IMG/VR virus record: IMGVR_UViG_3300028829_003504
Span: 1 to 64,000 of that record
Length of the DNA stretch: 64,000 nucleotides
Direction: 5' to 3' (one strand)
Shown: positions 6,464-53,142 of the stretch, in pieces
Position numbering within the stretch: position 1 is the first letter of the stretch
Layout of the letters: each line of letters starts with the position of its first letter
The notes under the pieces: generated by a model
The model's database searches: none
What the model was told of the DNA's origin: nothing
The model's input: the letters and a program-made list of their open reading frames with translations, nothing else
Program-made: the position numbers and the translations under genes

Positions 6464-8065
6464 ATGTTAGCAACTAACAGCCCTAGTGCTGGTGTCTATA
6501 CTGTCGAAAATGACAGGTCGCAACGTATTAAAGCGGCTTCTACTTCTATCGGAGCGATCGTTGGTGCAGCAAATAGAGGTCCAATAATGGAACCTACTAT
6601 CTGTTTCGACAATGAAGAATTCCGTCAGAAGTTCGGCAAGAAAGACCCACGCATCGGTTACATGCACTACTGCGCCGAAGCTTTTCTTGAGCAATCAAGA
6701 CTAAGCGTAGTACGTGTTGCATTAGATACAAAACTTGGCGGTGTTTACATTGCCACCGAATCGAATTTTTCCAAGCCTAGAACTTTACCTGCTGGTTTAG
6801 ACTCTGCTGACTTGTTAGACTTCGGAGTCGAAGACATAATGTTTATTTATGCCGTAGACCCGGGCAAATGGAATAACGAACTACGTATAGTTTGGTACCC
6901 AGATGTAAACGACGCAGAAGGTCAGGCTTTCTTTATTCAGGTATACGAAGGTAATACAGGTATCGCTACCGAGATTCACCATTGTACTACTCATGAAAAA
7001 GTTAACGGTAACGGTACTCAGATGTTTGTTGAAGACGTTATTAATGAAGGCTCAAATTTAATCCGAGTCCGCATTAATGAGAACCATCCTGCATTTGACA
7101 ACAATGATGAACCTGTACTTATAAACGCTGTAGGTGAAGCTACCCTTACTGGAGGCGATGATGGTTTACCTTTTAGCTTAGGTGAGCCTAGATTCGTAGC
7201 AGCGTGCTTACAAGCCTGGGAGTTGTATTCTGATTGGGAACAAGTCGAAGTTAATATCTTAATTAACGGCGGTTTGTCTATACCTTCAATCCAATTGAAG
7301 ATGGATGAAATCTGTATACGTAGACAGGATTGTATTGCTGTACTTGATATACCTAGCGATAAGCAAGACCCTATAGATGCAGTGGATTATCGACGTAATA
7401 CCTTGAATTTGAATAGTTCATTAAGTGCTTCTTATGCACCTGATATTTTAATCAGAGACAAAGATAACGGACGTGATCAATACGTTCCACCTTCAGGCCA
7501 TGTTGCAGCGCGTTACGCCTTTACGGATAATGACTTCGCTACTTGGTTTGCACCAGGCGGTCTTACTAGAGGTAGAATGCCTACTGCTATTGGCTTACGC
7601 CATAACTACAAGTTAAGTCACAGAAACATTCTTACTGAGAACCAAATCAACTCGATTATATCAGTTGAAGGTAACGGTATTAATATCTGGAATGCCGATA
7701 CTATGTATGCAATAAAGTCAGCATTAAACGACATTGGTATTCGTCGTATGCTATGCTTCTTACATTCTAGTGTTCGCATCAATAATTTGTATGCGGTATT
7801 TGAACCTAACGATAGTATCTTACGCCAACGTCAACGTTCTTCTGTGGAAGACTTGCTTGAGCCTATTTTACGAGGCCGAGGTTTATACTGGTACCAGGTA
7901 GTATGTGACGAAAGAAATAACACGGCTGAAACAACGGATAATGGCGACTTGATTGTTGACATTTACCTAGACCCAGTCCGATACACTAAGCGAATCCATT
8001 TAAGTGCGATTATTCCTCGTACAGGCCAAATAGATTTTGCTGAAAAACTTATTAACAATAGTTAA
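6464..8065 (+). CDS. tail sheath protein
   Basis: N-terminal SAGVYTVEND...GAIVGAANRGP, PGKWNN, PPSG, WFAPGG..RG and C-terminal IRR...FEPND motifs of contractile sheaths. Confidence 0.93.
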   Translation: MLATNSPSAGVYTVENDRSQRIKAASTSIGAIVGAANRGPIMEPTICFDNEEFRQKFGKKDPRIGYMHYCAEAFLEQSRLSVVRVALDTKLGGVYIATESNFSKPRTLPAGLDSADLLDFGVEDIMFIYAVDPGKWNNELRIVWYPDVNDAEGQAFFIQVYEGNTGIATEIHHCTTHEKVNGNGTQMFVEDVINEGSNLIRVRINENHPAFDNNDEPVLINAVGEATLTGGDDGLPFSLGEPRFVAACLQAWELYSDWEQVEVNILINGGLSIPSIQLKMDEICIRRQDCIAVLDIPSDKQDPIDAVDYRRNTLNLNSSLSASYAPDILIRDKDNGRDQYVPPSGHVAARYAFTDNDFATWFAPGGLTRGRMPTAIGLRHNYKLSHRNILTENQINSIISVEGNGINIWNADTMYAIKSALNDIGIRRMLCFLHSSVRINNLYAVFEPNDSILRQRQRSSVEDLLEPILRGRGLYWYQVVCDERNNTAETTDNGDLIVDIYLDPVRYTKRIHLSAIIPRTGQIDFAEKLINNS

Positions 8066-21924: not shown

Positions 21925-23601
21925 ATGAAGGCACATACTATTGATGTCTTAGGTAGATGTACACTACCTGGCCTACCAAATAACGACCTAGATGCGGCTC
22001 CAAAGCTCTACGTCGATTTAGCGACGGCTGGTGGTATATTTATCACAGATATTACACCGACTAACGAAGGTGGTAACAACATAGTTGGTCTAAAGACCTA
22101 TGAAGCAGATACAATTCCTGCGGATTTCTTAATGACCAATGGCATTACAAACGTTGCGGCTATACGCATCCATTTCCTAGCTGAGCCAAAACATGCGCTA
22201 TATAAGCTTGCAGTTATAGCTAAGTACGCAGATGGAGCTAGCGAAGTTGCGGCACAAAGTATTACACAACATGCAAACGACATGCGTATGTATGAAGGCT
22301 ACGTGGATATAGTAGTTGACGACCAGAAGATGGAAGAAACTATTACACTGGTTTCTTCTACAGGGACAGAAGCTACTGTCCACCTTGATCTATTAATAGG
22401 CGGTCCTGAAGTTTCGGCCTTTACTATCGGTTCATTGCCTGATGGTCAAACTGAACTTAAGGAAGGTGACGTAGTTTCAGTTAGCGGCGTAGTATCTAAC
22501 GATGCAACCTCGGTTAAGGTCCTTAACTCGGGAGTATCAATAGATTCCCATAACTTAAGTATAGGTGAAGAAGACTCAGGCGGTGCGGGTTCTCGTACTT
22601 TCTCAGGCTCTGTGACTGTATCTAGCCTAAGTGGATCGCTGGTAGCACAAGCTGTCGGTACGAACATGTTAGGTACTGAAGGCGATGCGTTTGATAGTAA
22701 CTCTGTTACGTTAAACCAGACACATCCTTCAATAGGTGCTGCAACTTATTCTTATCCTGGTACGCAAGAAGCAATTAAGGAAAGCGAAAGCGTAGGCATT
22801 GACGTTACTATTACTGATGCCGACGACTACGACTATTCTGCCGCAGCGGGTCTTTCGATTGACTCGCCTTCGGACTATTCAGTTTCTAAAACTGTTACCC
22901 GTGAAGATGAAACGATTCAATATAGCGTAGATGCTGACCTATTAACTATCACAGCCACTAAAGAAAGTAACGGTGCTGTTACTGTTAAGACTTTTAGCAT
23001 TAACGTAGTAAACACTCCGCCTAGTGCTGCCCTTTCTTTCGTAGGCAATCCAGCCCGTTTAAGATCTGATGCCAATGGAGAGACGTATAAGTTACAGATT
23101 ACTCCTAACCAACCTCTACTTAACGCACCTGACGCCCTTATGTCTGCTGCTAATGCTGGTGAGTTTACAGGTAATTGGTCTACATCTGGTCAGAACTACC
23201 GTCACAATTTTAAAGTTGTCGATACTGACTTACGTGGCGTACATAATTGGGATGGTCTTATTATTACAGGTCTTTCTGGTATACAGGCAAGCACAATCAC
23301 TAGTGGTTCTATCTATGAAATAGGTGGCTTCCTTGCTCGTACGCTTACTATACCTGCTTTAGCTCAGTTCGCCTCGATAGGTGCATTCGTATCAGACTTC
23401 TCTAAAGTCCGCGCAATGTACGTTGGTGCCGACGAGTTAGTCCGTCAGGTTGATTTGGCTCAAGTTGTTAAAGCATTCACTATCGTAGATTCAGGCGGCG
23501 CTTTAGATAACAACGGTGATCACCTATTCTTAAATGATGCAAACTTTGCAGGTACTAATACAACAGGTACCCTGCAGGTTGAAGTGGAGGAGTTAGAATA
23601 A
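21925..23601 (+). CDS. Ig-like repeat virion/fibre protein
   Basis: 558 aa, T/S/G/V-rich beta repeats, preceded by a TAATTT motif. Confidence 0.55.
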   Translation: MKAHTIDVLGRCTLPGLPNNDLDAAPKLYVDLATAGGIFITDITPTNEGGNNIVGLKTYEADTIPADFLMTNGITNVAAIRIHFLAEPKHALYKLAVIAKYADGASEVAAQSITQHANDMRMYEGYVDIVVDDQKMEETITLVSSTGTEATVHLDLLIGGPEVSAFTIGSLPDGQTELKEGDVVSVSGVVSNDATSVKVLNSGVSIDSHNLSIGEEDSGGAGSRTFSGSVTVSSLSGSLVAQAVGTNMLGTEGDAFDSNSVTLNQTHPSIGAATYSYPGTQEAIKESESVGIDVTITDADDYDYSAAAGLSIDSPSDYSVSKTVTREDETIQYSVDADLLTITATKESNGAVTVKTFSINVVNTPPSAALSFVGNPARLRSDANGETYKLQITPNQPLLNAPDALMSAANAGEFTGNWSTSGQNYRHNFKVVDTDLRGVHNWDGLIITGLSGIQASTITSGSIYEIGGFLARTLTIPALAQFASIGAFVSDFSKVRAMYVGADELVRQVDLAQVVKAFTIVDSGGALDNNGDHLFLNDANFAGTNTTGTLQVEVEELE

Positions 23602-27525: not shown

Positions 27526-29187
27526 ATGAAACAATTTACATCAATCAGTGCTGTAGATACTGACTCGGTGAAGGCATTTTCTCAGGTAATGGTATACTTG
27601 GCATACATGCGAGGAATCGGTGCCTTATCAAACTCTGCTTTGAAAACACTAGCCTCTCTAGAATCTAGATCTTATCCTTTCCTTGAGAGATTCAAAATAA
27701 GAAAGCCCTTATTCAAACGTATTATTGAAGATACAAGTAACAATGAATACGACGAAGATGATTGGTTGGCCTTAGTTAAAATACTTAGAGCCAAAAAAGA
27801 TATCATACATGCTGAGACTGACATAGACACTCACTTCTATAAACTAATATTCGATTGTGCTAGCTATATGATACGAGGCACGGATAGTGCATTAGTCCGT
27901 ATAGGTAAGGCTGTGTCTCACTTCCAAGACCCGAACTTGGGCCGAATGTTCTTAACATCCGTTGCAGACCAAGGTGACATATTAACTAAATTGAAGACAA
28001 TAGTACGACGGATGGTTAAACGCGATGGCCTTGAGATAGACGCCGACGAACGTAAAGTACTTAAGGTTAAAAAGCCCGATCTACTTAAACAGTACAACAA
28101 GTTACGCCGCGATCTTAATGCCGTACCTAAAGACTTTGTGTCCTCCTATATAAGACAAACTGGTAATAGTTTAGTAGCGATACATGAAGTTATTGACCAA
28201 CTCCATAAAGCAGGTATCAAGCACCATAGTATACCTAGAGGTTTCAAAGGCTATTTGGATGATACTCTTTCATTTTATACAGAAGCTAAGTTGAAGCTTA
28301 ACGGGGTTCCTGCAGGTGAAGTCTTAATGAATCCCTCATACGATCCTAAGAAAGATAACGGGTACGTGTGTCAGGCTAAAGCTCCTATGGCAAAAGACTA
28401 TTCTCGTATATATACGGTCAAATTCAAATCAGATAGCACAAAGAAGAAATTTGATGCTGTAGGTAATCTATCTACTAAGGTAAGTTCTATTAGGGCCAAG
28501 TGGCTCTCTGACTTACGTAAAGGTACTGCCGAACGTGCTGCTGTTCTAGCTATGTGCTGTGAACTGATTTACTTGACTTCCGCCAGAATAGGTTCAACTA
28601 AAGGATCGACGGCTGGTGAGAAAACTTACGGTTTTACCTCACTGATAGTAGGCCACTATAAGAAGAAAGGTAAAGCTAGATTACTTGAATATAAAGGTAA
28701 GAAATCACAAACCCAGAGACATACCATTCCAGATAACCCCTTAAGTTCAAAAATCTGTATTGAGTATTTAGACGAAATGGTCATAGGCAAGAAACGCGCT
28801 GACCGATTGATTACTTTTAGGGGCAGGCCTGTCTCGCCTAAGTCCATTAACGATTATCTAAGAACTCTAGGTGTACCTGAAGGCGTTACTATACATAAGT
28901 TTAGAACTTTACGGGGGACTATGATAGCACGTAAAGCTATAGATAGAAGCCCTTTCAAGAATAGAACAAAACAACCTACACAGAAACAAGTAAACGATTG
29001 GTTGAAGAAAAGTTTAGAGAAGGTAGCCAAAGAGTTAGGCCACTTTAATAATGGTAAACTTACTGTTAATACCGCTATACAGAATTACATCGACCCGTCC
29101 ATACTTGAAGAATTCTATGAAGAAGCAGGAGTAAGACCTCTTGCTGTAATTGAACGTAGTATCAAGCTAGCCAAAGGCAATGTGTAA
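27526..29187 (+). CDS. DNA topoisomerase IB
   Basis: Catalytic pentad in order: SARIG (R), YKGKK (K), HKFRT (R), ELGH (H), QNYIDP (Y). Confidence 0.85.
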   Translation: MKQFTSISAVDTDSVKAFSQVMVYLAYMRGIGALSNSALKTLASLESRSYPFLERFKIRKPLFKRIIEDTSNNEYDEDDWLALVKILRAKKDIIHAETDIDTHFYKLIFDCASYMIRGTDSALVRIGKAVSHFQDPNLGRMFLTSVADQGDILTKLKTIVRRMVKRDGLEIDADERKVLKVKKPDLLKQYNKLRRDLNAVPKDFVSSYIRQTGNSLVAIHEVIDQLHKAGIKHHSIPRGFKGYLDDTLSFYTEAKLKLNGVPAGEVLMNPSYDPKKDNGYVCQAKAPMAKDYSRIYTVKFKSDSTKKKFDAVGNLSTKVSSIRAKWLSDLRKGTAERAAVLAMCCELIYLTSARIGSTKGSTAGEKTYGFTSLIVGHYKKKGKARLLEYKGKKSQTQRHTIPDNPLSSKICIEYLDEMVIGKKRADRLITFRGRPVSPKSINDYLRTLGVPEGVTIHKFRTLRGTMIARKAIDRSPFKNRTKQPTQKQVNDWLKKSLEKVAKELGHFNNGKLTVNTAIQNYIDPSILEEFYEEAGVRPLAVIERSIKLAKGNV

Positions 29188-29247: not shown

Positions 29248-30297
29248 ATGGTACCTTTATCCCACAACGTAAAATCCGTTAAATACGTAAGGTCACCCAG
29301 TGACGTATTTAAGTTAGAGCCACTTCCTGCGGGTATTAAAGAACAAACTATTGGTTTTAGAACACAGCTGGCACGTATACTAACAAACGACGACTACCGA
29401 CGTATTGTTATATTAGGCCCCTGTAGTATCCATGATACCGAAGCAGGTTTAGAGTACGCAAACTTAGTCAAAGAATGGCAAAAGAAGTTACCTCACCTGT
29501 TACTTGTTATGCGTGTTTATTTTGAAAAACCAAGAACAACTACAGGCTGGAAGGGATTCATCAACGACCCTAACTTGGATGGATCTTTTGATATCAATCT
29601 AGGCTTACTTAAGGCTCGTGATTTCTTAATCAAGATTGCCCAAATAGGCGTGCCTACTGCTACCGAGTTTCTCGATCCATTCACGCCGAACTACTTCAGG
29701 CATTTGTTTTCTTGGGGAGCTATAGGTGCAAGGACTCTAGAGTCTCAAATACACCGTGAACTTGCATCAGGTTTGCCTATGCCTATTGGCTTCAAGAACT
29801 CGACCGGCGGTAACTCTAAGTTATTGGTTAATGCTATTAAGTCCGCACGGAGTCCACACTCTTATTTAGGTATCGACTCCGAGGCAAGACTATCTATAAT
29901 GGAGTCTGAGGGTAATCCTTATGCACATACAGTCCTCAGAGGTTGCACCAATGGACCTAATTACAATAAGAACAGCTTAATGTCTACTACGGTGTTATTG
30001 CAGAGAAATAACGTAAGTGATAGTATAATTGTAGATTGTTCGCATGACAATTGTGACGGTGATTACAAAAAGCAGTATGGGATATCAAGATACGTATTCG
30101 CCGAGATTCGCCAAGGGCACTACAACGTTAAAGGTGTTATGCTTGAATCGTTCCTTGAGGAGGGACGACAATCTATAAGCGATTCACTGACTTACGGAAA
30201 GTCAATCACGGACCCTTGTTTAGGTAAAGCAACCACTGCGTCTCTTCTTATAGACTTAAATGGCCAAGCGTCTTCACTGGAGTTATACTATGCGTAA
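29248..30297 (+). CDS. class I DAHP synthase (AroF/G/H family)
   Basis: GPCSIHD, RVYFEKPRTTTGWKG, IGART, GFKN, VDCSH, GVMLES, YGKSITDPCL. Confidence 0.95.
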   Translation: MVPLSHNVKSVKYVRSPSDVFKLEPLPAGIKEQTIGFRTQLARILTNDDYRRIVILGPCSIHDTEAGLEYANLVKEWQKKLPHLLLVMRVYFEKPRTTTGWKGFINDPNLDGSFDINLGLLKARDFLIKIAQIGVPTATEFLDPFTPNYFRHLFSWGAIGARTLESQIHRELASGLPMPIGFKNSTGGNSKLLVNAIKSARSPHSYLGIDSEARLSIMESEGNPYAHTVLRGCTNGPNYNKNSLMSTTVLLQRNNVSDSIIVDCSHDNCDGDYKKQYGISRYVFAEIRQGHYNVKGVMLESFLEEGRQSISDSLTYGKSITDPCLGKATTASLLIDLNGQASSLELYYA

Positions 30298-30940
30298 ACT
30301 TAAATCAAACTTTGTAGTAGTTGAAGGAGCGGATGGGGCTGGTAAAACGGCACTGCTAACTAACTTAAAATCAAAGTTAGAGGAATTGGGCTACACTGTG
30401 GTTGTAGGCCGAGAGCCTGGTGGTACCATCTGGTCTGAACTTATTCGTGATGCTGTCCTTTACGCTCCCTCAGAAGATAAACCTAGTAATAAGTGTGTCC
30501 TTACAGGAATGTTCCTTAGCCGATTTAATCTATACGAAAAGCGGATAGCTCCGGCGTTAAGTGAGGATAAGGTCTTTCTGTGTGATAGGTTCGTAGCTAG
30601 TTCTTTTGCTTACCAAGTATATGGTAAAGACCCTATATACTATGATATGTTTGATTCTTTAAATCACTTTGGTCAGTTCAGTAGGTACCAATCCATTGTC
30701 CTTGACGTGACGTATGCTGAAAGTATTAAGCGTAGAGGTAAAGGTCGCGACCTTCTTTTTGAAGACGATATGGAGATTCAAAATAGCTCCGAAGATAAAT
30801 TCAATAACCTACGAGAAGGTGTTAAGGACTTTTACAAAAGTACTCAACACGGTACTTACATCCTAATAGATACTACAACTAAGTCATTGGATGAAGTTAA
30901 CGACTTGGCTCTTGACAGCCTATTTAAGCAGGTAGATTAA
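30290..30940 (+). CDS. tmk: thymidylate kinase
   Basis: VVEGADGAGKT, REPGGT, CDRF..SS.AYQ; ATG at 30290 with GGAG RBS. Confidence 0.92.
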   Translation: MRKLKSNFVVVEGADGAGKTALLTNLKSKLEELGYTVVVGREPGGTIWSELIRDAVLYAPSEDKPSNKCVLTGMFLSRFNLYEKRIAPALSEDKVFLCDRFVASSFAYQVYGKDPIYYDMFDSLNHFGQFSRYQSIVLDVTYAESIKRRGKGRDLLFEDDMEIQNSSEDKFNNLREGVKDFYKSTQHGTYILIDTTTKSLDEVNDLALDSLFKQVD

Positions 30941-31601: not shown

Positions 31602-34600
31602 ATGCTAGGAAATCAAATAGCCAGAGCCATAGGCACACTTAAGTCAACTGGAATACTTTCAAATTTAACTGTAGACTACCAGAGTCAGAGTGCCTCCGTA
31701 CAACTCCTCACTAGTACCTCAAGTGCTGATGAAAACGGCTTTAATAGAACTACGGTTGCTACTCACATGATGCCAGAACGTGGCTACCTGATTAGAACTG
31801 AGCAAGTGTATCAGGATGGTGATGAAGACAACGAGTTTGAAATGAAAACTGCGTTCACCATGAATGAAGAATATATAGGAGACCCTGAGTGGGCTGAACG
31901 TCTATACAATATGGGTATTGTTCCTCAACTAGCTAGCCCTAAACATAAAGTATGTTCAGTAGGCTACTGTGAGAAAGAAGACAAATGGTACGGCTGGAGC
32001 CATAGAGCGATTAGTGGTTTCGGAGTAGGTAGTGAGGTGACCAGAGGTCATTGTGCATATAAACCTTCTACTAAGGCAGAATTCCTACAAAGCTTAGATG
32101 ATTGGTATCGCCACAACGGCAACGAAGTGAATGTTATTCCTACTGACGATGGTGCTATCGTAAACACTACATCTTTTCGAGTGACTGATGGTAAGCCTTT
32201 ACGATATACCCACATTGAAGAGTTTAAACCAGGTCGCGGTTCATTTAAGGTTTGTGATATGGATGAGGCTAAGACACTAGCCTTGGATTTCGCCGAATCC
32301 GTCAGCGCTGCTGCGGTTAACGTAGATTCCGCTATAGTACAGGATTCGGTACTCAGTGAACTGTCTAAACGTTTTCAAGAGATGTCGGCACGTATGCTAA
32401 CGAAGGCCAATCAACTACTTCGTATACAGAGATTCCTCAATGTAAATACAGATGGAGACTTAGACGGTCCAGGCTGCGCCGATAAATTTCATACTAATCT
32501 TAAATCAACCATAGAAGCCCTTAACGGTCCTAATGACAGTGACGCTAACTTTGGTCTTACTACACGTAAAGCTTCTTTGGTTAATATACCCTCAGGTGAT
32601 AATCAACCTGATGTAGGAACTCCTCCTAAACCAGTCGAAGAAGTAGGCCCTGTTGTAGGGGAAAAAGACGACGATGAAGATTACACGGATAGACTAGATA
32701 GGCTTAAAGCTCGACACGGTAGTACAAACTACATTGAATCAGAAATACAACAACGTACCATTGAGATGTTCTCCGGAGCTGAAAGTCCCGTTAGCCTTAG
32801 CATGGAGAGTGAGGAATCAGAAGAAATACTGGCTGAGTGCGAACACAGTCGTATTATCCGTAACGTTATCCACTTTGACGAGTATGCCCCTGCCTCGGGT
32901 TTACCCTTTGTTAAAAACAAAGAAAATGGTAACACGAGTAGCATCCTGGATGCCAATTTGTCGGATTATAAGGTCATGGACGAACGTTGTGCTTCTATAA
33001 TACAAGAAGCCCGACTTAAAATTATATCTAATCGAGAAGCGTATAAGGCCCGAACTGAAAAGCAGAAATCAGAAGATGACAACTGGTCAAAGGTCATCAA
33101 TAAGATGCTCACTGGGTCAGAGTTGAATGAAGGTCCAGTTAGATCCAGTAGAACGAGCGGTGTTGATTCAGGTATGGCCTCAGAAGCAGCGGCAAAGTTT
33201 GCACCTACTGAGTTTAGTTGGTTCAAGTATATAGGTAAGAAGACACGCAGCTTCGATCACCATAAGCAAGACGTTGAACTTGAAATCGAAACTAATGAGC
33301 GTTTCGGTATTATGTATAATTCAAGACTTAAAGCCTACATTATAGTTGAAGCATCTATGTTTGGCGCAAGGGGAGAGGTGTGGGAATTCCGCATTAACGA
33401 AAAGGAACTTAAACTTCTAGTTAAGTCTAGTAGACCTTTCAATGGTAAAATCGGCGGACAGAAGATTGTTAAAGGTGAACCTACTAACTTAAACCTGTTT
33501 ACTAATCGTAAGCAAGTAGAAGTTAAACCGTTGCAGGATACAGGAATGGTTGCTCCTAATCGACGAGTTAAAAAGACGGGAGGTGTTAAGATCATTAAAC
33601 GCCTTGATATGGATGATGTTGAAGACGGTGTTAAGATTAAACGTAAGCCTGTCTATATTGGTGTGTTCCAACCTAGCGGTAGTAGTGACAAGTATAACTT
33701 GGTGACCAACGAGAAACTATCCGAATTGAAGACTGACCTACAATCTAGAATGGAAGCCTTGCCTGATATCGGCTCGTTTGCTACTATATACCAATTACGT
33801 TCTGATAATCGTTTCGTCATTAAGGCATTGAAGGCTAAAGTACCTAAGATACAACCAGCACATAAATCCATACTTGATCGTGAGTCTCTCATAAAGCCTG
33901 TTGAGTTCAAAGGTAAAAATATACGTTTACGTAATGATAGTGTACCACTACCTCATTTCCAACCAGGTGCTCCTGAGTTTACCGAACCTATGTTCTTCGG
34001 TAACCAGACAAACGTGTTGGCTGAGATTCGTGACTCCATAGTATTGGATAAATACTTTAGTGGTGCATTCACTTTGCTTGACCCTAAAGGTTATATGCAA
34101 AAGAAATCTTACAAGCGATCGTTAAACCAAGGTAAGGCTAGTGAGCGTCGAAGCAAAATGGGTATTAGAGATTTAAAGTCGAAAGGTATGGTGTTCTTAG
34201 AACTAGTTGCTTTGCATGATTCAAATTCTTTTGAGGACGAAGCTTATGCCTTACTTATACGTTTACGTAAACAGTTCGGTAAGAAGATTATAGGTCAGGT
34301 CGAAGTGAAGCGTTTGAAGCTAGATGGTATCAATAAAGAGTACCTAACAGTTAGACTAATCGCTAACATTAAGCCAGTGAGCGATGAAATTAAAAAACGA
34401 TCACTTAAACTGTATGACCTAATTGAGTCTAATAAGCTTTCTATAGGAATCAATCAATATGGATTTATGGTAGGTGACAAGCTAATTCCTTGTGCTGTGA
34501 TTGAACCCGTGTATACGGAAGGTAGCATTAAGGTCCAACCTACTAATGCTCAGCTACGTCCAGAAGTTGTGTCCGATTTATATGACTTAAATGGTACTGT

Positions 34601-34613
34601 TAAACTATTCTAG
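31602..34613 (+). CDS. large multidomain protein, probably virion-internal
   Basis: 1003 aa; SVGYCEKEDKWYGWSHRA domain, acidic linker with S-x-S motifs, then a basic domain homologous to 8661..9335. Confidence 0.65.
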   Translation: MLGNQIARAIGTLKSTGILSNLTVDYQSQSASVQLLTSTSSADENGFNRTTVATHMMPERGYLIRTEQVYQDGDEDNEFEMKTAFTMNEEYIGDPEWAERLYNMGIVPQLASPKHKVCSVGYCEKEDKWYGWSHRAISGFGVGSEVTRGHCAYKPSTKAEFLQSLDDWYRHNGNEVNVIPTDDGAIVNTTSFRVTDGKPLRYTHIEEFKPGRGSFKVCDMDEAKTLALDFAESVSAAAVNVDSAIVQDSVLSELSKRFQEMSARMLTKANQLLRIQRFLNVNTDGDLDGPGCADKFHTNLKSTIEALNGPNDSDANFGLTTRKASLVNIPSGDNQPDVGTPPKPVEEVGPVVGEKDDDEDYTDRLDRLKARHGSTNYIESEIQQRTIEMFSGAESPVSLSMESEESEEILAECEHSRIIRNVIHFDEYAPASGLPFVKNKENGNTSSILDANLSDYKVMDERCASIIQEARLKIISNREAYKARTEKQKSEDDNWSKVINKMLTGSELNEGPVRSSRTSGVDSGMASEAAAKFAPTEFSWFKYIGKKTRSFDHHKQDVELEIETNERFGIMYNSRLKAYIIVEASMFGARGEVWEFRINEKELKLLVKSSRPFNGKIGGQKIVKGEPTNLNLFTNRKQVEVKPLQDTGMVAPNRRVKKTGGVKIIKRLDMDDVEDGVKIKRKPVYIGVFQPSGSSDKYNLVTNEKLSELKTDLQSRMEALPDIGSFATIYQLRSDNRFVIKALKAKVPKIQPAHKSILDRESLIKPVEFKGKNIRLRNDSVPLPHFQPGAPEFTEPMFFGNQTNVLAEIRDSIVLDKYFSGAFTLLDPKGYMQKKSYKRSLNQGKASERRSKMGIRDLKSKGMVFLELVALHDSNSFEDEAYALLIRLRKQFGKKIIGQVEVKRLKLDGINKEYLTVRLIANIKPVSDEIKKRSLKLYDLIESNKLSIGINQYGFMVGDKLIPCAVIEPVYTEGSIKVQPTNAQLRPEVVSDLYDLNGTVKLF

Positions 34614-37142: not shown

Positions 37143-37174
37143 AAAAAAAGGGCAGCCGAAGCTACCCTTTTTTT
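37143..37174. terminator. UUCG-loop terminator (bidirectional-capable)
   Basis: A7-GGGCAGCCGAAGCTACCC-T7; near-copy at 50855-50879. Confidence 0.85.
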
Positions 37175-37202: not shown

Positions 37203-37991
37203 TTAGTTCTTGCGTTTTTTAACAGAAACGCCCATCGCTAATAATGCAATACCCATTAGCGCTAATGGTTTTGGTTCTGGTACTTCTACGGCTGTAATAC
37301 TACCGACTGTAACATCAAAAGACCGCACTCTATGTCCTTCAGGCAGGTCTTCACCACCGATAAAGTCTAGGTATTCTGCAGGTGCGGATACATTACCGCC
37401 TACTACGAGTGCCGTAACGTCTGTAAGATCTGCAAACTCAAATACTCCATAATTCAAGAAAGCATTATGAGGAGTCACGTAATCATCATGGCCGGGGCCT
37501 AACACGGTAACCTTTTCAGATTTAGTACCTGCGTCCCACCAAATTTCAACTTCGAATAGGTAGTTTTCATCTGCAAAAACTGTCTCAGTCATGAATGCAC
37601 TAAGCCCTTCTTCCAGGAAATTAACCCCACGCCCAGTAACCAAGTCCATTAAACCGCTTGTGTTGACTTCGGACGAATTGTCTTCACCATCCCACTGCAT
37701 CCAGAAACTTGCGTCCACTGTTGACTGTGCTGAAAAAGACATATTGCCATCGGCTACACCTATCGCGGCAGTATATTCTTCATTCAAGGCACCGTAGTTT
37801 GTAACGACTAAGTCACGCTCGCCTCCCAAGATACCTGCGCCGAATACTGAACTCGAAACAGTCTCACCGACTTCCGCCGTTATGAATTCTTGGTCTGTAT
37901 TAAAAGTATCTATGATACCCGCGTTTGCTACACTTGACATCGAGACTAGTATCACTGCCAGTACTAACAGTATGTTAATAATAGTTTTCAT
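37203..37991 (-). CDS. PEP-CTERM protein (exosortase substrate)
   Basis: Signal peptide ending VANA-G, acidic beta-rich body, C-terminal VPEP + hydrophobic helix + KKRKN. Confidence 0.9.
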   Translation of the reverse strand: MKTIINILLVLAVILVSMSSVANAGIIDTFNTDQEFITAEVGETVSSSVFGAGILGGERDLVVTNYGALNEEYTAAIGVADGNMSFSAQSTVDASFWMQWDGEDNSSEVNTSGLMDLVTGRGVNFLEEGLSAFMTETVFADENYLFEVEIWWDAGTKSEKVTVLGPGHDDYVTPHNAFLNYGVFEFADLTDVTALVVGGNVSAPAEYLDFIGGEDLPEGHRVRSFDVTVGSITAVEVPEPKPLALMGIALLAMGVSVKKRKN

Positions 37992-38032
37992 TTTGTTTCC
38001 TTTATCCGTATGTTTATATTTGGATTAAACAG

Positions 38033-38368
38033 GAGACCATCAAGGGTCACGGGAGTAATCATTATTAGAGGTGATGACTAGCACCACCTCGTATGAACGC
38101 TTTTTTACTGTGGTAATCACTGTTACGATATTCGGTCTGCACAGGGTTGGATTGTATCAGAAGCGTAATCCCCAAAACGCTATAGTGCTTGGGCTCCGTA
38201 GAACCTATGTGACCTTGATGCGGTCTTATCAAGCTAATCGAGCTGGTGTCAGACTGTGTATTTATGCCTTGCGCCCACAGATTATATATTTGGCGCGCCC
38301 AACCTTCGTCTAACCGTTTTTGGGTGCTTGTATACTTGCAATGTTCTAGACCTAAATCTATCCGCCAG
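38033..38368. ncRNA. candidate structured RNA
   Basis: Long-range stem 38033-38050/38209-38227 plus hairpins 38068-38090, 38254-38280, 38295-38327 and stem 38243-38248/38363-38368. Confidence 0.45.
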
Positions 38369-38498
38369 AATCATAAGATATATATGAGAATAAAATGAGT
38401 TGGCAGAAGTCAATGCACTTATACTAGGACCGTTCAGCACGGTTATCCAAAGTAGGACTATGTAGTATTTAAACATATAGCCGCTCTTTACGTTTGTA

Positions 38499-43277: not shown

Positions 43278-44729
43278 CTACGCAGCTAACAGTTTTTCAT
43301 AGAAACCGTAGGCCACTTCCCTAACTTCATCGAAGGTTTGATTGCGAAGAAGCTCGCCGGTATTCCAGACAGGCTCAAGAAGCCCGCTATTTATACGGTT
43401 ATCAACTTGCCTCCAAACGATATCACCAAATTCATTAAACTCTACGCAGAAGTAACCTTCTTTAGAATGTTTATTCGGATCAGCTTTAGGACGTTTGCTG
43501 GTTTTAGTAGGAACGCCGTTAATAGTCATCATGCTTGCTTTCATAGCGAAGCCACCATCGTCACGGCCGTGAGCTTGTAGTAGTTTACCGCCTTGACCAA
43601 ACACTAAATTTAAAGCGCTGAGCTTTTTGCTTCTCATTAAGTCTTGGATATCAGTGATAACTTGTACGTCAGTTCCGTCACCCTGTATTACACGAATGTA
43701 ATCAGGTAGAACTTTATAGCCTTTTCTATTGATCTCGTATCCGAAGATTTCCATCAAACGCTCAACTATACGTACAGGTTCGTTAACTGCATGACCTGAG
43801 TCAGGGCGTATTATCAAGCAACCCTTTCCCTTACCTTCTTTGAATGCTGCAATGACTTCATCTTTAAGTTCTTCCCAGTAGCCTAAAGCACGGTCTGTGT
43901 CATAGGTATCAGGTAGTACACTTACTTTGTCGCCGTTTGCTACATACGTTTTAAGTAGGAAAGAGAAAAGTTCTTTTTCACGGGCCTCACCCCAAGATAG
44001 AACTACGTTATGCTCAATAGCAAAAACAGAATATGCTGACATACCCTCTTTAGTGCCGTAAGCTTGCTCAGCAGTCCATGTACCTTCAAGAGTATCACTA
44101 CCCTTAGAAGTAACTTGGTGAGACATTCCACCAACTGATGCACCTTCACCACAATTTACACCTCTAGCACCGAAGTCATTAAGAGCAAAATCCATATAGC
44201 CGGCGATTAGATCATCGTCTATACTTTCATTGGCAAATTTACCTATAATAACTTTCTGCTCTAGACTCTTAGTTGCAACGGTAATAGAATACCAGATGCG
44301 CTGAATTAAAGCTTCGAAGTACATTGGTAACCACGCAAACTCTTTATCAGTGTTGGTAATAACCATCAGTGGAGTTTTCTGAGCCGTTACAGTACCTTCA
44401 GGTAGTGCGCGGAACTCAAGTGGAAGTTTACCATCATGCTTCGTAACAATAAGTTCCCAACCTTTACGATTGAACTTAGCGCCGTGCCGCAATGCGAAGT
44501 CCTCGCAGATATCAATCATTTCCATTGTGATACGTTCACTAAAGTAACGCTTAAGGATATATTGCAATCCAAAGAACATTGTTTTAGTCATACCGTAACG
44601 GCTTTCAAGATAGACGTAAGAGAATTCTAAACCTTCAACCAATTGTTCGTAGTGACCCAATTTGTAGCTGTCGGTTCTCAAGATTAATGGTACATCTGTA
44701 ATTAACATATTAGTGTTAAAAAGTTTCAT
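43278..44729 (-). CDS. nadV: nicotinamide phosphoribosyltransferase (NAMPT)
   Basis: TDSYKLGH, FFGLQY, DFGARG, GSDT, EHNV, DTYD, IRPDSG, IQGDG, FGQGGKLLQ, FAMKAS, KHSKEG. Confidence 0.95.
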   Translation of the reverse strand: MKLFNTNMLITDVPLILRTDSYKLGHYEQLVEGLEFSYVYLESRYGMTKTMFFGLQYILKRYFSERITMEMIDICEDFALRHGAKFNRKGWELIVTKHDGKLPLEFRALPEGTVTAQKTPLMVITNTDKEFAWLPMYFEALIQRIWYSITVATKSLEQKVIIGKFANESIDDDLIAGYMDFALNDFGARGVNCGEGASVGGMSHQVTSKGSDTLEGTWTAEQAYGTKEGMSAYSVFAIEHNVVLSWGEAREKELFSFLLKTYVANGDKVSVLPDTYDTDRALGYWEELKDEVIAAFKEGKGKGCLIIRPDSGHAVNEPVRIVERLMEIFGYEINRKGYKVLPDYIRVIQGDGTDVQVITDIQDLMRSKKLSALNLVFGQGGKLLQAHGRDDGGFAMKASMMTINGVPTKTSKRPKADPNKHSKEGYFCVEFNEFGDIVWRQVDNRINSGLLEPVWNTGELLRNQTFDEVREVAYGFYEKLLAA

Positions 44730-47336: not shown

Positions 47337-48413
47337 TTAGTCTTGTTGAGTGAAACCTGTTCCGTAACCACTAGCTAACATGTTTTGAATAATGAAGTAG
47401 TGATCCGCGTACAAGGCTTTACTCATTCTACGTACTTGAGCAAAAGGGAACCAACGAGCTTCTTTAGCATCGTCCATCCCTTTTACCTTAGGTAATTTTG
47501 AATCAGTAAGAATGAAAGATCCAACATGTGTGGTGAAATCACCACGGTCATCTCGCATAGGGTCTTCAAACATCTTCTTACCCCGATATGCCTGTTCTAG
47601 CGCACGAGGCGGTACGTTAATGTCTGTTTCTTCTTTAAGCTCACGTAAGATACAATCTCTTGCATACTCACCTGGGTTCTTAAAGCCACCAGGTAAAGCC
47701 CATTGGTCTTTGCCTGGGAAGTCTCTGCGTTTAATCAACAATAAGTGACCGTGGCAAACTACAAGTGCATCTCCCGTTATGAAATTAATTCCGTGAGGCA
47801 GATCCTTGTAGTCATTCTTGTATGCTAGGACTGAGCGATTGTGACCTACCAACCACTCGTACTCCTTTGTTTTACGAAACTTCTCCAAAAACACATTAGT
47901 CGAAGTTGGACAATTCGCAAAAGAAACTTGAGGATATACTGCGTTGTTGAAGTATATCTCACGTAACGGAGTTGCAGATATAGCATCCAAGTTATCTACA
48001 TGATGTTTCTTCCAACGAGGAAAGCCTCTAAGATAATAACTAGTATTATCTTTCAAGTGACCAACAAGTGCAATGTCATCGGGAAGACCCAAATGCTGCG
48101 CATGGTCATGGGCTAAACGTTGTACTTCTGATTCCCAATCATATTCAACATAAAGGTAATCGTTGAGCGGCTTAACTTGACATTTGAAGGATTTGGTTCC
48201 TGTCAGTGCAGGTCGAATCATTTCTAAACGTTCTTCGTATGAGAACGGATTTGCCAAGCTACGACTACGGTTGATTGATCCAATAAGTATCAATACATTG
48301 TCAGCAATCTTGCACGCTTCATCAATTAAGTAATCGTGACCGTTATGGTATATATGACTACGCATAATCACAACAGCCAAAGCTACCTTACCTTTTACTT
48401 TAAAATCTTTCAT
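47337..48413 (-). CDS. bifunctional NMN adenylyltransferase / ADP-ribose pyrophosphatase (NadM-Nudix)
   Basis: HNGH, GS...RS..NPF...ER, GHLKDNTSYYL, ISATPLR, WALPGGF...RELKEET, DDAKEARW, DH. Confidence 0.93.
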   Translation of the reverse strand: MKDFKVKGKVALAVVIMRSHIYHNGHDYLIDEACKIADNVLILIGSINRSRSLANPFSYEERLEMIRPALTGTKSFKCQVKPLNDYLYVEYDWESEVQRLAHDHAQHLGLPDDIALVGHLKDNTSYYLRGFPRWKKHHVDNLDAISATPLREIYFNNAVYPQVSFANCPTSTNVFLEKFRKTKEYEWLVGHNRSVLAYKNDYKDLPHGINFITGDALVVCHGHLLLIKRRDFPGKDQWALPGGFKNPGEYARDCILRELKEETDINVPPRALEQAYRGKKMFEDPMRDDRGDFTTHVGSFILTDSKLPKVKGMDDAKEARWFPFAQVRRMSKALYADHYFIIQNMLASGYGTGFTQQD

Positions 48414-51135: not shown

Positions 51136-53142
51136 CTATATAGCTACTTCACCATCTAGCTTGGGGCCATGTTCATAATTATGGAGAACAAAATGGTCAC
51201 CTGTCAACTCGTCGAAACTCTCAAAGGGCTTGACTTCTAATGAAGGCATAGGTTTAACTTCTTGCTTCATCTGTTCTTCAAATAGATCTCGATGGAAGTC
51301 ATAGATATGATAGTCACCAAACATGTGAAAGAAGTTACGTGCTGCCATACCTGACTTCTGGGCAAAGGCCATAAGTAACGCACTGTAACTGCCTATGTTA
51401 AAGGGAACTCCGATGAACCAATCCGCGCTGCGCTGGTACATTGTCATATCAATGAAGTACTTAGGTACACCTTTAGAATCGAAGAATTCACCGACGACTC
51501 TTAGATGTTCCTCTTTATCGGCACAAGACATAGAGAATAACTCTTGACTAATTTTACTTTTGATTGTAACCACTACCATAGGGTTCTCAGGATTATAGTC
51601 TAAAAGACCTTCTCTCTCCATGAAGTAAGAGTCTTGCATTAACTCCGCAGTACGTATGTTCGACCAATGTTCATAGCGGTCGGAGTGACTCATAGGACTT
51701 GTACCTAATTGGAACATCATGTGACAGGGAGGTAACGCTTGCTGACCGACCGTTGCGTTTTCATGAGGCTCAAAATATCTTACTTTAGGAGCATCCACGT
51801 AGTCAAGTAAAGCTTCGAGTAATTCCTCCTCGTTCAGACCTTCGGGGAGATCTGAAGGTCCTCCATTGTGTAGGAGACTTTCGCAGTAATCACGCGCTTG
51901 CATTATGGGTGCTTCACCTCCAGAGTCAAGACGCCGTTCGGCCTCATCCATCCACTTCACATTAGCCATTACTTTTTCAATTTCACCGTCCAGATAGTGC
52001 TCTTTGCGATCTACTTGGTTTGCAAATGCTACTTGCGTAACAGGAGTTAAGCCTGGGTTCAAGGCAGTAACTAACATACGGCGGTCATTAGGATTGTTCT
52101 TCAAACTTTCGGCAACGGCATCCAGTTGATCAAACTTCTTAGTATACACAGTATGCTCGGCATCCCATTTACCTTCAATACCTAACGCATTAAGAACTCT
52201 ATAGTAAGTTTCAACGAAAGCGTTGTACTCAGGTAACTCTAAGACATTGTCCCCGAAGTACATTTGGATAGTGCCTTCACTGAGATCACGCCCAGAAGCT
52301 TCGGTAGTAGTAATTATACTAGAGCGCATGCCGTTTTGTTCAAGATAGCCCTGGAAGTCTTCGAGAGTGAAGTCGCCATTTTTAATCTTAGCCCGTAGTT
52401 CTTCATCCATTCTACTAGTTTGGTCAAAAGAGCCTTGTGCAATATAGTTCTGGTTTATTAAGAAGTCAATCATACCAGTATTAGTATCAGCCACGGTGCG
52501 TGTGTCTTCCCATGCTCGCCATTGTGCTCCGTATACAGGACCTAGATTCCCATTGTTGTCAGCCCAACCGTCCCATATTTTAGCACCTAATGTTTTAATG
52601 TTCGTTTCACCTCGACATAGCCAACCCAGCTCTTTCATGATACCTTTAAAGGCTGTGAACTTAGTAGTGACTAGAGGGAAACCATCACGCATATCGAATT
52701 GCATCATGTGGCCGAACAGCTTAGTAGTAGGCGTTGTAGTTCTGTTTCCGCTACGCGCTCCTGCGTAAAGAATGTCCTGAGCCGCAGATAGATACTGTAC
52801 ATCGACATGTCTTTTATTAGGATGATTCTGCCAGGTATTAGGTACTTCTTTTTCTAACGTACCTGATTTAACAAAAGTAATAACAGCATTACGGCCATCA
52901 TAATTACTGTACTGCGCCTGTACTACCACAAGAGGTCCACGTAATGTGTAAGGGCCTGTACGGTCTTCGTAGTGGCAATGCTGTATTAAATCACCTTCCT
53001 TGAAGCGGCTAGACATATCGCGGTCTATATTAAAGAAAGAAACAATATGGTAATGATCAATGTCAGTAGCCATCAGGTAATCACATTTAAGATGGACTGA
53101 TTTACCCATCATAACTTGATAAGGTATTTTAACTGATTCCAT
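51136..53142 (-). CDS. thyA: thymidylate synthase with N-terminal extension and three large insertions
   Basis: NRT, FPLVTTK, EL.W, IWDGWA, LGPVYGAQWR, DRRM, LPPCH, YQRSAD..GVPFN, GDYHIY. Confidence 0.92.
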   Translation of the reverse strand: MESVKIPYQVMMGKSVHLKCDYLMATDIDHYHIVSFFNIDRDMSSRFKEGDLIQHCHYEDRTGPYTLRGPLVVVQAQYSNYDGRNAVITFVKSGTLEKEVPNTWQNHPNKRHVDVQYLSAAQDILYAGARSGNRTTTPTTKLFGHMMQFDMRDGFPLVTTKFTAFKGIMKELGWLCRGETNIKTLGAKIWDGWADNNGNLGPVYGAQWRAWEDTRTVADTNTGMIDFLINQNYIAQGSFDQTSRMDEELRAKIKNGDFTLEDFQGYLEQNGMRSSIITTTEASGRDLSEGTIQMYFGDNVLELPEYNAFVETYYRVLNALGIEGKWDAEHTVYTKKFDQLDAVAESLKNNPNDRRMLVTALNPGLTPVTQVAFANQVDRKEHYLDGEIEKVMANVKWMDEAERRLDSGGEAPIMQARDYCESLLHNGGPSDLPEGLNEEELLEALLDYVDAPKVRYFEPHENATVGQQALPPCHMMFQLGTSPMSHSDRYEHWSNIRTAELMQDSYFMEREGLLDYNPENPMVVVTIKSKISQELFSMSCADKEEHLRVVGEFFDSKGVPKYFIDMTMYQRSADWFIGVPFNIGSYSALLMAFAQKSGMAARNFFHMFGDYHIYDFHRDLFEEQMKQEVKPMPSLEVKPFESFDELTGDHFVLHNYEHGPKLDGEVAI

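What the first reader, a model, noticed from the sequence alone, without database searches (positions are those of the whole stretch)
37203..37991. Phage-encoded PEP-CTERM surface protein
It has a complete signal peptide plus VPEP-TM-KKRKN tail and its own terminator. Established: PEP-CTERM proteins are exosortase-processed cell-surface proteins of EPS-producing Gram-negative bacteria. No exosortase is visible in this window. Inference: a lytic phage uses the host sorting system to alter the cell surface or floc/biofilm, mask a receptor, or saturate the exosortase. It also suggests a host with exosortase, such as Alteromonadales.
Basis: partly seen in the sequence, partly recalled or inferred. 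Interest (0 to 1): 0.62.

Follow-up and report, generated by a model that had tools for sequence, protein, structure and literature searches.

The report
Phage-borne PEP-CTERM surface protein gene
A complete 262-kb marine jumbo phage carries a selectively maintained gene for a secreted sugar-binding-like protein whose tail can only be processed by the host's exosortase, and related copies sit as stand-alone gene cassettes in several unrelated uncultured phages.

Summary
Window 37203-37991 (- strand) encodes a 262-aa protein with a signal peptide (AxA site), a ~210-aa beta-sandwich domain and a VPEP / membrane helix / KKRKN tail. The tail passes NCBIfam TIGR02595. A strong hairpin terminator follows at 37143-37174.

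The window belongs to a complete 261,788-bp jumbo myovirus with terminal repeats. That genome has no exosortase and no integrase. The same gene with the same neighbours was assembled independently several times, so it is not a chimera.

The protein belongs to a large, unnamed bacterial PEP-CTERM family; 9 of 11 bacterial genomes carrying it have an exosortase. All phage-borne copies fall in one well-supported clade of 16, and 11 of them have phage context in at least four or five phage backgrounds. These include two complete ~310-kb phages of another lineage.

dN/dS is about 0.1. Most relatives have a sigma-70-like promoter and a terminator, which is the layout of a moron (a self-contained extra gene cassette). 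None of 50,697 GenBank phages has a homologue.

The likeliest role is a host-exosortase-sorted, glycan-binding surface protein that remodels the infected cell's surface. Host, expression and function remain untested.

The parts
37203..37991 (-). CDS of the 262-aa PEP-CTERM protein (stop codon 37203-37205)
   Evidence: Identical protein on 6 independent contigs. dN/dS about 0.1 in phage relatives.
37920..37991 (-). Sec-type signal peptide, residues 1-24, with an A-N-A signal peptidase I site
   Evidence: Read from the sequence. A22 and A24 are conserved in 50 homologues. No dedicated signal-peptide predictor was available.
37287..37919 (-). Mature domain, residues 25-235: CBM11/CIA30-like beta-sandwich with no Pfam or NCBIfam model
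   Evidence: AF2 model has mean pLDDT 89.8. VIA-align Z 9.5-10.9 to the 7zkq_A chain of a complex I assembly intermediate, CBM11, CBM30, CBM29 and an agarase N-domain. Atlas structure hits to PEP-CTERM and CIA30 clusters. No family model covers it.
37206..37286 (-). PEP-CTERM sorting signal: VPEP, membrane helix, KKRKN
   Evidence: TIGR02595 17.2 bits (cut-off 16) and 21.6 bits. P-E-P is invariant in alignment A1.
37143..37174 (-). Intrinsic terminator: A7, 7-bp stem, UUCG loop, U7. It looks bidirectional.
   Evidence: z -2.9. A homologous terminator with a compensatory stem change lies downstream of the 72% homologue in L002.
37998..38002 (-). Ribosome-binding site AAGGA, 6 nt before the ATG
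   Evidence: Read from the sequence. The block is conserved in L047.
37992..38498 (-). 507-nt conserved non-coding region upstream (leader, promoter region or ncRNA; unresolved)
   Evidence: Aligns with the 637-nt gap in L047, with blocks of 70-88% identity and no shared ORF. Rfam finds nothing. Only a weak sigma-70 match, 7 of 12.

Best explanation
The gene is a moron-like cargo gene of a marine jumbo myovirus. It encodes a substrate for the host's exosortase.

Proposed mechanism:
1. The precursor is exported by Sec and its signal peptide is cut at A-N-A|G.
2. It stays tethered in the inner membrane by the C-terminal helix.
3. The host exosortase (EpsH/Xrt), which the phage lacks, cleaves it at VPEP.
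4. It is passed to the cell surface or exopolysaccharide layer.
5. There the CBM11/CIA30-like beta-sandwich binds a surface glycan.

The most likely pay-off for the phage is remodelling or masking of the surface of the infected cell. This could exclude superinfecting phages or prevent loss of progeny on infected cells and debris.

Shown: gene structure, phage residence, family membership, absence of a phage exosortase, purifying selection, recurrence in several phage lineages, and the cassette architecture in relatives.

Inferred: export, exosortase processing, glycan binding and the benefit to the phage.
For: - Domain architecture, with TIGR02595 over its cut-off.
- The genome is complete (261,788 bp, direct terminal repeats). 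It has a major head protein and tail sheath, and its capsid protein is 47-58% identical to those of PaBG/Lu11/Erwinia Y3-type jumbo phages.
- No exosortase in G000, G001 or G002, and exactly one PEP-CTERM protein in each.
- In bacteria the family travels with exosortase: 9 of 11 genomes, against 1 of 14 control genomes.
- A 16-member clade (SH-aLRT 99) holds all phage-context copies. Phage context is confirmed for 11 of them.
- Neighbouring clades lie on bacterial chromosomes or long contigs, for example Photobacterium ganghwense.
- dN/dS is 0.11 for L020 versus L021 (dS 0.25) and about 0.10 for G000 versus L002.
- V-P-E-P is kept in 13 of 16 clade members and V-S-E-P in the other 3.
- Sigma-70-like promoters scoring >= 10 of 12 occur upstream in 8 of 11 copies, against 5.5% of background windows. 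Hairpin-plus-U terminators occur downstream in 10 of 11.
- The fold matches carbohydrate-binding modules and phage tail-fibre receptor-binding modules.
Against: - The host is unknown, so presence of an exosortase in it is untested.
- G000 itself has only a weak sigma-70-like promoter (7 of 12).
- The Pfam PEP-CTERM score is below its gathering threshold for this copy.
- The fold matches are middling (Z about 10, TM 0.3-0.46), and a shared beta-sandwich fold does not prove glycan binding.
- Three clade members have S-E-P instead of P-E-P.
- Five of the 16 clade members sit on contigs too short to classify.
- The tree is a quick search with SH-aLRT support only.
Confidence: 0.6

Rival explanations
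1. The tail works only as a C-terminal membrane anchor. The protein stays in the inner membrane facing the periplasm and acts there (for example blocking DNA entry, like T4 Imm/Sp-type exclusion proteins), without exosortase processing.
For: No exosortase is known for the unknown host, and none is in the phage. Three clade members carry S-E-P rather than P-E-P. The Pfam score is below threshold.
Against: The P-E-P triplet is invariant across alignment A1, in which members share only 28-72% overall identity with the query. V-P-E-P is kept in 13 of 16 phage-clade members. A plain anchor would not need this motif. Bacterial relatives co-occur with exosortase.
Confidence: 0.15
2. It is a PepA-like matrix or floc protein. 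The phage makes infected cells stick to neighbours or to exopolysaccharide so that progeny meet new hosts.
For: The tail gives tail-only similarity to flocculation protein PepA (NF033554, 25 bits). PEP-CTERM proteins are needed for floc formation in Zoogloea (Gao et al. 2018, as cited in PMC12642866). The domain has a CBM-like fold.
Against: The N-domain is unrelated to PepA: the score is far below the cut-off of 80 and the match covers the tail only. There are no aggregation data.
Confidence: 0.15
3. It is a virion or receptor-binding accessory protein, since the fold resembles tail-fibre modules.
For: Foldseek against viral models lists tail-fibre proteins. VIA-align lists the HFTV1 turret and phage baseplate or tailspike domains.
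Against: It has a cleavable signal peptide and a C-terminal membrane anchor. It lies on the opposite strand from the structural block, among nucleotide and NAD metabolism genes. It is a stand-alone cassette in relatives. It has no PHROG match. The TM-scores are only 0.25-0.43.
Confidence: 0.05
4. It is an assembly chimera or host contamination, or a decaying passenger gene.
For: The sequence comes from a metagenome, and bacterial homologues exist.
Against: The same gene and neighbours occur in at least 3 independent full-length assemblies and further contigs. Synteny is kept in a 60% relative. GC is 0.44 against 0.41 for the genome. dN/dS is about 0.1. The frame is intact in all 16 clade members.
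Confidence: 0.02

Closest known systems
PEP-CTERM / exosortase substrates of Gram-negative bacteria (TIGR02595, PF07589; e.g. flocculation protein PepA, NF033554)
   Same: Signal peptide, PEP motif, membrane helix and basic tail. It belongs to a large bacterial family of 230-300-aa proteins with this architecture, and the family co-occurs with exosortase.
   Different: It is encoded by a complete jumbo phage that has no exosortase and no other PEP-CTERM gene. The N-domain has no curated model, and named subfamilies match the tail only.
Phage morons and envelope-targeted exclusion proteins (lambda Bor/Lom, T5 Llp, T4 Imm/Sp) - from general knowledge
   Same: An accessory gene flanked by its own promoter and terminator in most relatives, with the product sent to the cell envelope. 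In L048 it lies on the strand opposite to most of its neighbours.
   Different: Sorting would depend on the host exosortase rather than on the lipoprotein or plain Sec routes. It is found in large, apparently lytic marine phages. An exclusion function is not shown.
Prophage-encoded sortase (LPXTG) substrates of Gram-positive bacteria (e.g. SasX) - from general knowledge
   Same: A phage gene whose product needs a host-encoded sorting transpeptidase to reach the surface.
   Different: A different sorting system (exosortase/PEP-CTERM), a Gram-negative-type envelope, and no integrase in this phage.
CBM11 / CBM30 / CBM29 carbohydrate-binding modules and the CIA30 domain
   Same: Beta-sandwich fold: Z 10.9 (7zkq_A, a chain of a complex I assembly intermediate), 10.4 (1v0a, CBM11), 10.0 (2c24, CBM30) and 9.5 (1gwk, CBM29). 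The Atlas structure search lists CIA30 clusters at TM 0.55-0.58.
   Different: No sequence-level relation: PDB profile search E >= 0.47. No ligand-binding residues were tested.
PEP-CTERM-domain protein HOG10 of Dehalococcoides IME1 elements (bioRxiv 10.64898/2026.09.15.751708)
   Same: A putative virus-like mobile element reported to encode a PEP-CTERM-domain protein.
   Different: That is an integrative element of a different kind in a different phylum. No homology was tested, and the protein is mentioned there only in passing.

Membership tests
PEP-CTERM sorting-domain proteins (TIGR02595 / PF07589) | C-terminal tripartite signal: PEP motif, hydrophobic helix, basic cluster at the extreme C-terminus | tested here: met
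   VPEP, 17 hydrophobic residues, then KKRKN. TIGR02595 17.2 bits over the cut-off of 16 and 21.6 bits. Pfam 15.9 bits, under its 20.7 cut-off.
PEP-CTERM sorting-domain proteins (TIGR02595 / PF07589) | N-terminal signal peptide for Sec export | tested here: met
   Residues 1-24 have an AxA site that is conserved in 50 homologues. This is by inspection; no predictor was available.
PEP-CTERM sorting-domain proteins (TIGR02595 / PF07589) | An exosortase (EpsH/Xrt) encoded in the same genome | tested here: not met
   No PF09721 match in the complete 261,788-bp phage genome, nor in G001 or G002. The enzyme would have to come from the host, which is unknown. 9 of 11 bacterial genomes with relatives have one.
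PEP-CTERM sorting-domain proteins (TIGR02595 / PF07589) | Cleavage or processing by exosortase and delivery to the surface | not testable with these tools
   Needs the host and biochemistry.
Unnamed PEP-CTERM protein family with a CBM11/CIA30-like domain (defined here by profile A1/A2) | Full-length homology, including the conserved IDxF, GGxRD and QWDG motifs | tested here: met
   3,841 representatives at E <= 1e-3 and 1,459 at <= 1e-10, most of them 230-300 aa and matched end to end. Invariant columns D28, F30, G56, R59, D101, G102, D141, D226 and P240.
Named PEP-CTERM subfamilies (THxN NF038125, PepA NF033554, EDSAP-1 NF041538, XDP1 NF041927) | Whole-protein score over the curated cut-off | tested here: not met
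   Scores of 30.2, 25.0, 23.2 and 14.4 bits against cut-offs of 85, 80, 100 and 125. The matches cover residues 230-261 only.
Phage moron (autonomous promoter-gene-terminator cassette) | Own promoter upstream and own terminator downstream, with the gene dispensable for the core phage functions | tested here: inconclusive
   The terminator is clear in G000 and in 10 of 11 copies. A promoter scoring >= 10 of 12 is present in 8 of 11 copies, but G000 scores only 7 of 12. The gene is absent from all related GenBank jumbo phages. No transcription data.

The most novel reading that the evidence does not exclude
Marine phages of several unrelated lineages have captured, and exchange among themselves, a dedicated clade of exosortase substrates. 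They use the host's PEP-CTERM pathway to display a glycan-binding protein on the infected cell. This would be a previously undescribed route of phage-driven surface conversion or superinfection exclusion in large, apparently lytic phages. It would also offer a small natural reporter substrate for the still unsolved exosortase mechanism.
Probability: 0.35. Interest if true: 0.75.

Novelty: new variant of a known kind. Interest (0 to 1): 0.6.

Why it matters
The exosortase/PEP-CTERM system is widespread, but what the enzyme attaches its substrates to is still unknown. A single, small, strongly selected substrate carried by phages gives a clean handle on that question.

For phage biology, this would add the exosortase pathway to the host sorting systems that phages exploit. 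It would also be an example of a surface-conversion gene in jumbo phages that appear lytic.

In addition, it predicts that the unknown hosts of at least four or five uncultured marine phage lineages carry an exosortase. That is a usable host-prediction marker.

Tried and rejected
- Host identification failed. The nearest named bacterial homologue (Photobacterium ganghwense) and the Tara gammaproteobacterial MAG (31% identity) are too distant to name a host.
- Single-protein scan of IMG/VR: nothing. The 50-sequence alignment was too diverse for pattern scanning. The 8-sequence alignment gave 2 phage genomes and one provirus edge; that copy looks disrupted at the C-terminus and is probably host DNA.
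- tblastn of three divergent clade members against 50,697 GenBank phages: no match. PHROGs: no family.
- PDB by sequence: nothing meaningful. The first AF2 model, from 8 sequences, was mediocre (pLDDT 72.9) and was replaced by the 50-sequence model.
- The simple promoter/terminator scanner found no promoter for the gene and missed the terminator.
- Upstream conserved region: no Rfam family (a PhrS hit at E 0.03 lies on the terminator and is below threshold). The pattern is absent from IMG/VR. The JGI scan returned only another copy of the same phage. A k-mer search of the genome gave chance-level matches only.
- A Kdo or surface-sugar role for the DAHP-synthase-family gene at 29248-30297 was considered and rejected: it is an AroF/G/H-type enzyme.
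- Complex prediction was not used, because no host exosortase sequence is known.

Full report
**The observation.** Window 37203-37991 on the - strand is an open frame of 262 codons. The product has four parts.
- Residues 1-24 form a typical Sec signal peptide, with K2, a hydrophobic core and A-N-A before G25.
- Residues 25-235 form the body.
- V-P-E-P follows at 236-240, then a 17-residue hydrophobic stretch.
- The last five residues are KKRKN.

NCBIfam's PEP-CTERM model TIGR02595 scores 17.2 bits, over its cut-off of 16. In a six-frame search of the whole genome it scores 21.6 bits and is the only hit. Pfam PF07589 scores 15.9 bits, below its gathering score of 20.7. An AAGGA ribosome-binding site lies 6 nt before the ATG.

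Twenty-eight nucleotides after the stop codon there is a hairpin at 37143-37174. It has a 7-bp stem and a UUCG loop, flanked by seven A and seven U. Its z-score is -2.9, and none of 200 shuffles folds as well.

**The genome.** The window is the first 64 kb of a virus record of 261,788 bp with direct terminal repeats, rated 100% complete.
- It has a major head protein, tail sheath proteins and other phage families.
- Its capsid protein is 47-58% identical to those of the PaBG / Lu11 / Erwinia Y3 group of roughly 260-kb jumbo myoviruses.
- Base composition is even across the window. The gene has 44% GC against 41% for the genome.
- No tyrosine integrase was found.
- The gene lies in a leftward block of accessory and nucleotide or NAD metabolism genes: Dam-like methyltransferase, guanylate kinase, DHH phosphoesterase, NAMPT, an NMNAT/Nudix protein and thymidylate synthase. 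It is not in the structural block.

**Not a chimera.** The identical protein is on record on six contigs, three of them 261.5-262.2 kb long. Among the places shown, one from a JGI sample and one from an ENA sample have the same neighbours. A further JGI contig carries the same sequence. A 3.2-kb contig with a 60%-identical homologue keeps the same local gene order.

**No exosortase in the phage.** PF09721 finds nothing in the complete genome.

**The family.** No Pfam, NCBIfam or PHROG model covers residues 25-235. Named PEP-CTERM subfamilies match the tail only and score far below their cut-offs.

A profile of the first eight homologues, run against 1.84 billion representative proteins, found 3,841 relatives at E <= 1e-3 and 1,459 at E <= 1e-10. 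Most are 230-300 aa long and matched from end to end. In a sample of 144, 136 have P-E-P in their last 45 residues. Of 50 members, 48 match PF07589 at E <= 0.01. This is therefore a large, unnamed family of PEP-CTERM proteins.

Named genomes that carry it include Thermoanaerobaculia, Sedimenticola, Chloroflexota, a Tara gammaproteobacterial MAG and Planctomycetaceae, and also Photobacterium ganghwense. Nine of those eleven draft genomes have an exosortase, against one of fourteen control genomes.

**The fold.** With 50 sequences AlphaFold gives a confident model (mean pLDDT 89.8). It is a beta-sandwich. The best solved matches are:
- 7zkq_A, a chain of a complex I assembly intermediate, at Z 10.9;
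- an agarase N-domain at Z 10.7;
- CBM11 at Z 10.4, CBM30 at Z 10.0 and CBM29 at Z 9.5;
- several phage turret, baseplate and tailspike modules.

The Atlas lists PEP-CTERM and CIA30 clusters. The viral library lists tail-fibre proteins at low TM-scores. These scores are middling. They support 'carbohydrate-binding-module-like fold' but not a ligand.

**Phage copies form one clade.** In a maximum-likelihood tree of 144 members, a clade of 16 (SH-aLRT 99, stem length 0.65) contains every copy found in phage context. Eleven of the 16 have phage context:
- the window itself;
- L002, a 24-kb piece of a related phage that shares many genes with this genome but in a different order;
- L047, which keeps the same synteny;
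- L020 and L021, from two complete phages of 306.5 and 310.7 kb with terminal repeats;
- L007 and L024;
- L023;
- L025 and L027, whose neighbours match PHROG families;
- L048, a 22-kb contig with rIIB.

The two 310-kb phages have a tail sheath and a different terminase type. The window's capsid protein finds no match in them, and they share only a few genes with this genome. They also lack an exosortase and have exactly one PEP-CTERM gene each.

Five clade members sit on contigs too short to classify. Neighbouring clades lie on bacterial chromosomes or long contigs.

No homologue exists in 50,697 GenBank phage records.

**Selection.** dN/dS is 0.11 between the two 310-kb phages (dS 0.25). It is about 0.10 between this phage and L002, where dS is saturated. 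The signal peptide, the AxA site and the tail are kept in all 16 clade members. Thirteen have V-P-E-P and three have V-S-E-P. A motif that a plain membrane anchor would not need has therefore been kept while the proteins diverged to 30-70% identity.

**Cassette architecture.** In 8 of 11 copies the 200 nt upstream hold a sigma-70-like promoter scoring at least 10 of 12. One is a perfect TTGACA-17-TATAAT. Only 5.5% of random windows from the same DNA score that high. In 10 of 11 copies a hairpin with a U-tract follows the stop codon. In L048 the gene lies on the strand opposite to most of its neighbours. This is the classical moron layout and suggests transcription by the host polymerase.

The copy in the window is the exception. 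Its best promoter match is 7 of 12, and it is preceded by a 507-nt non-coding region (see below).

**Interpretation.** I conclude with high confidence that this is a real, selectively maintained, phage-borne member of a bacterial PEP-CTERM family that depends on a host enzyme. The mechanism I propose is inference from what is established for this sorting system:
1. Sec export;
2. tethering by the C-terminal helix;
3. cleavage at PEP by the host exosortase;
4. delivery to the surface or exopolysaccharide;
5. glycan binding by the beta-sandwich.

I favour surface masking or exclusion as the benefit, because envelope-targeted morons of other phages do this. A PepA-like aggregation role and a purely membrane-anchored periplasmic role remain open. 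A virion role is unlikely.

The data point only to marine, probably gammaproteobacterial, exosortase-bearing hosts.

**Literature.** Full-text searches found no description of PEP-CTERM proteins in tailed phages. There are only passing mentions:
- a PEP-CTERM-domain protein in Dehalococcoides IME1 elements;
- TIGR03118-family proteins, which have a putative exosortase-interaction domain, among gene transfers into hot-spring viruses.

**Limits.**
- The host is unknown.
- The tree is a quick search.
- Signal-peptide assignment is by inspection.

Noticed in passing
window 37992-38498 (- strand); L047 1708-2344: A 507-nt non-coding region lies directly upstream of the gene. It is conserved with the 637-nt gap of a 60%-identical relative, in blocks of 70-88% nt identity, which is as high as the flanking coding DNA. 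There is no shared ORF, and indels fall in predicted loops. Of 87 RNAalifold pairs, 13 are compensatory (only two sequences). MFE z-scores are -1.9 and -2.1. There is no Rfam match, and the 72% homologue in L002 lacks the region. It may be an ncRNA, a structured leader or a phage-specific control region.
   Followed up: partly
window 31602-34613 (+): A 1003-aa protein whose N-terminus matches Pfam Tad6, a type I Thoeris inhibitor (E 2.7e-42, 144.7 bits against a cut-off of 27). This is a candidate anti-defence gene fused to a much larger protein.
   Followed up: no
window 43278-44729 (-) and 47337-48413 (-): A nicotinamide phosphoribosyltransferase and an NMNAT/Nudix-type protein (PHROG matches). 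Together they look like an NAD+ salvage pair of the kind phages use against NAD-depleting defences. These genes are also among the few shared with the unrelated 306-kb phage G001.
   Followed up: no
window 29248-30297 (+): A phage-encoded 3-deoxy-7-phosphoheptulonate (DAHP) synthase of the AroF/G/H type (TIGR00034, 389.8 bits against a cut-off of 173). This is the first enzyme of the shikimate pathway and an unusual auxiliary metabolic gene. A dTMP kinase lies next to it at 30260-30940.
   Followed up: partly
window 27526-29187 (+): A 553-aa protein with a eukaryotic-type DNA topoisomerase IB catalytic core (PF01028, E 3e-22).
   Followed up: no
window 51136-53142 (-); L002 11622-14454: The thymidylate synthase frame is 668 aa, much longer than the PHROG profiles it matches, and it matches in two stretches. 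In the related contig L002 the gene is split around a homing-endonuclease-like ORF. This suggests inserted mobile elements (intein or intron).
   Followed up: no
window 6464-8065, 21925-23601 (+); G000 229906-231564: There are several tail-sheath-like genes in one genome: two in the window by PHROG and another near 230 kb.
   Followed up: no
L022 1-705 (IMG/VR provirus record, 18,976 bp): A family member at the edge of a predicted provirus appears to lose the PEP-CTERM tail, with the frame diverging after about residue 175. It lies next to an ABC-F ATPase gene, so it is probably host DNA at the provirus boundary, or a frameshift.
   Followed up: no
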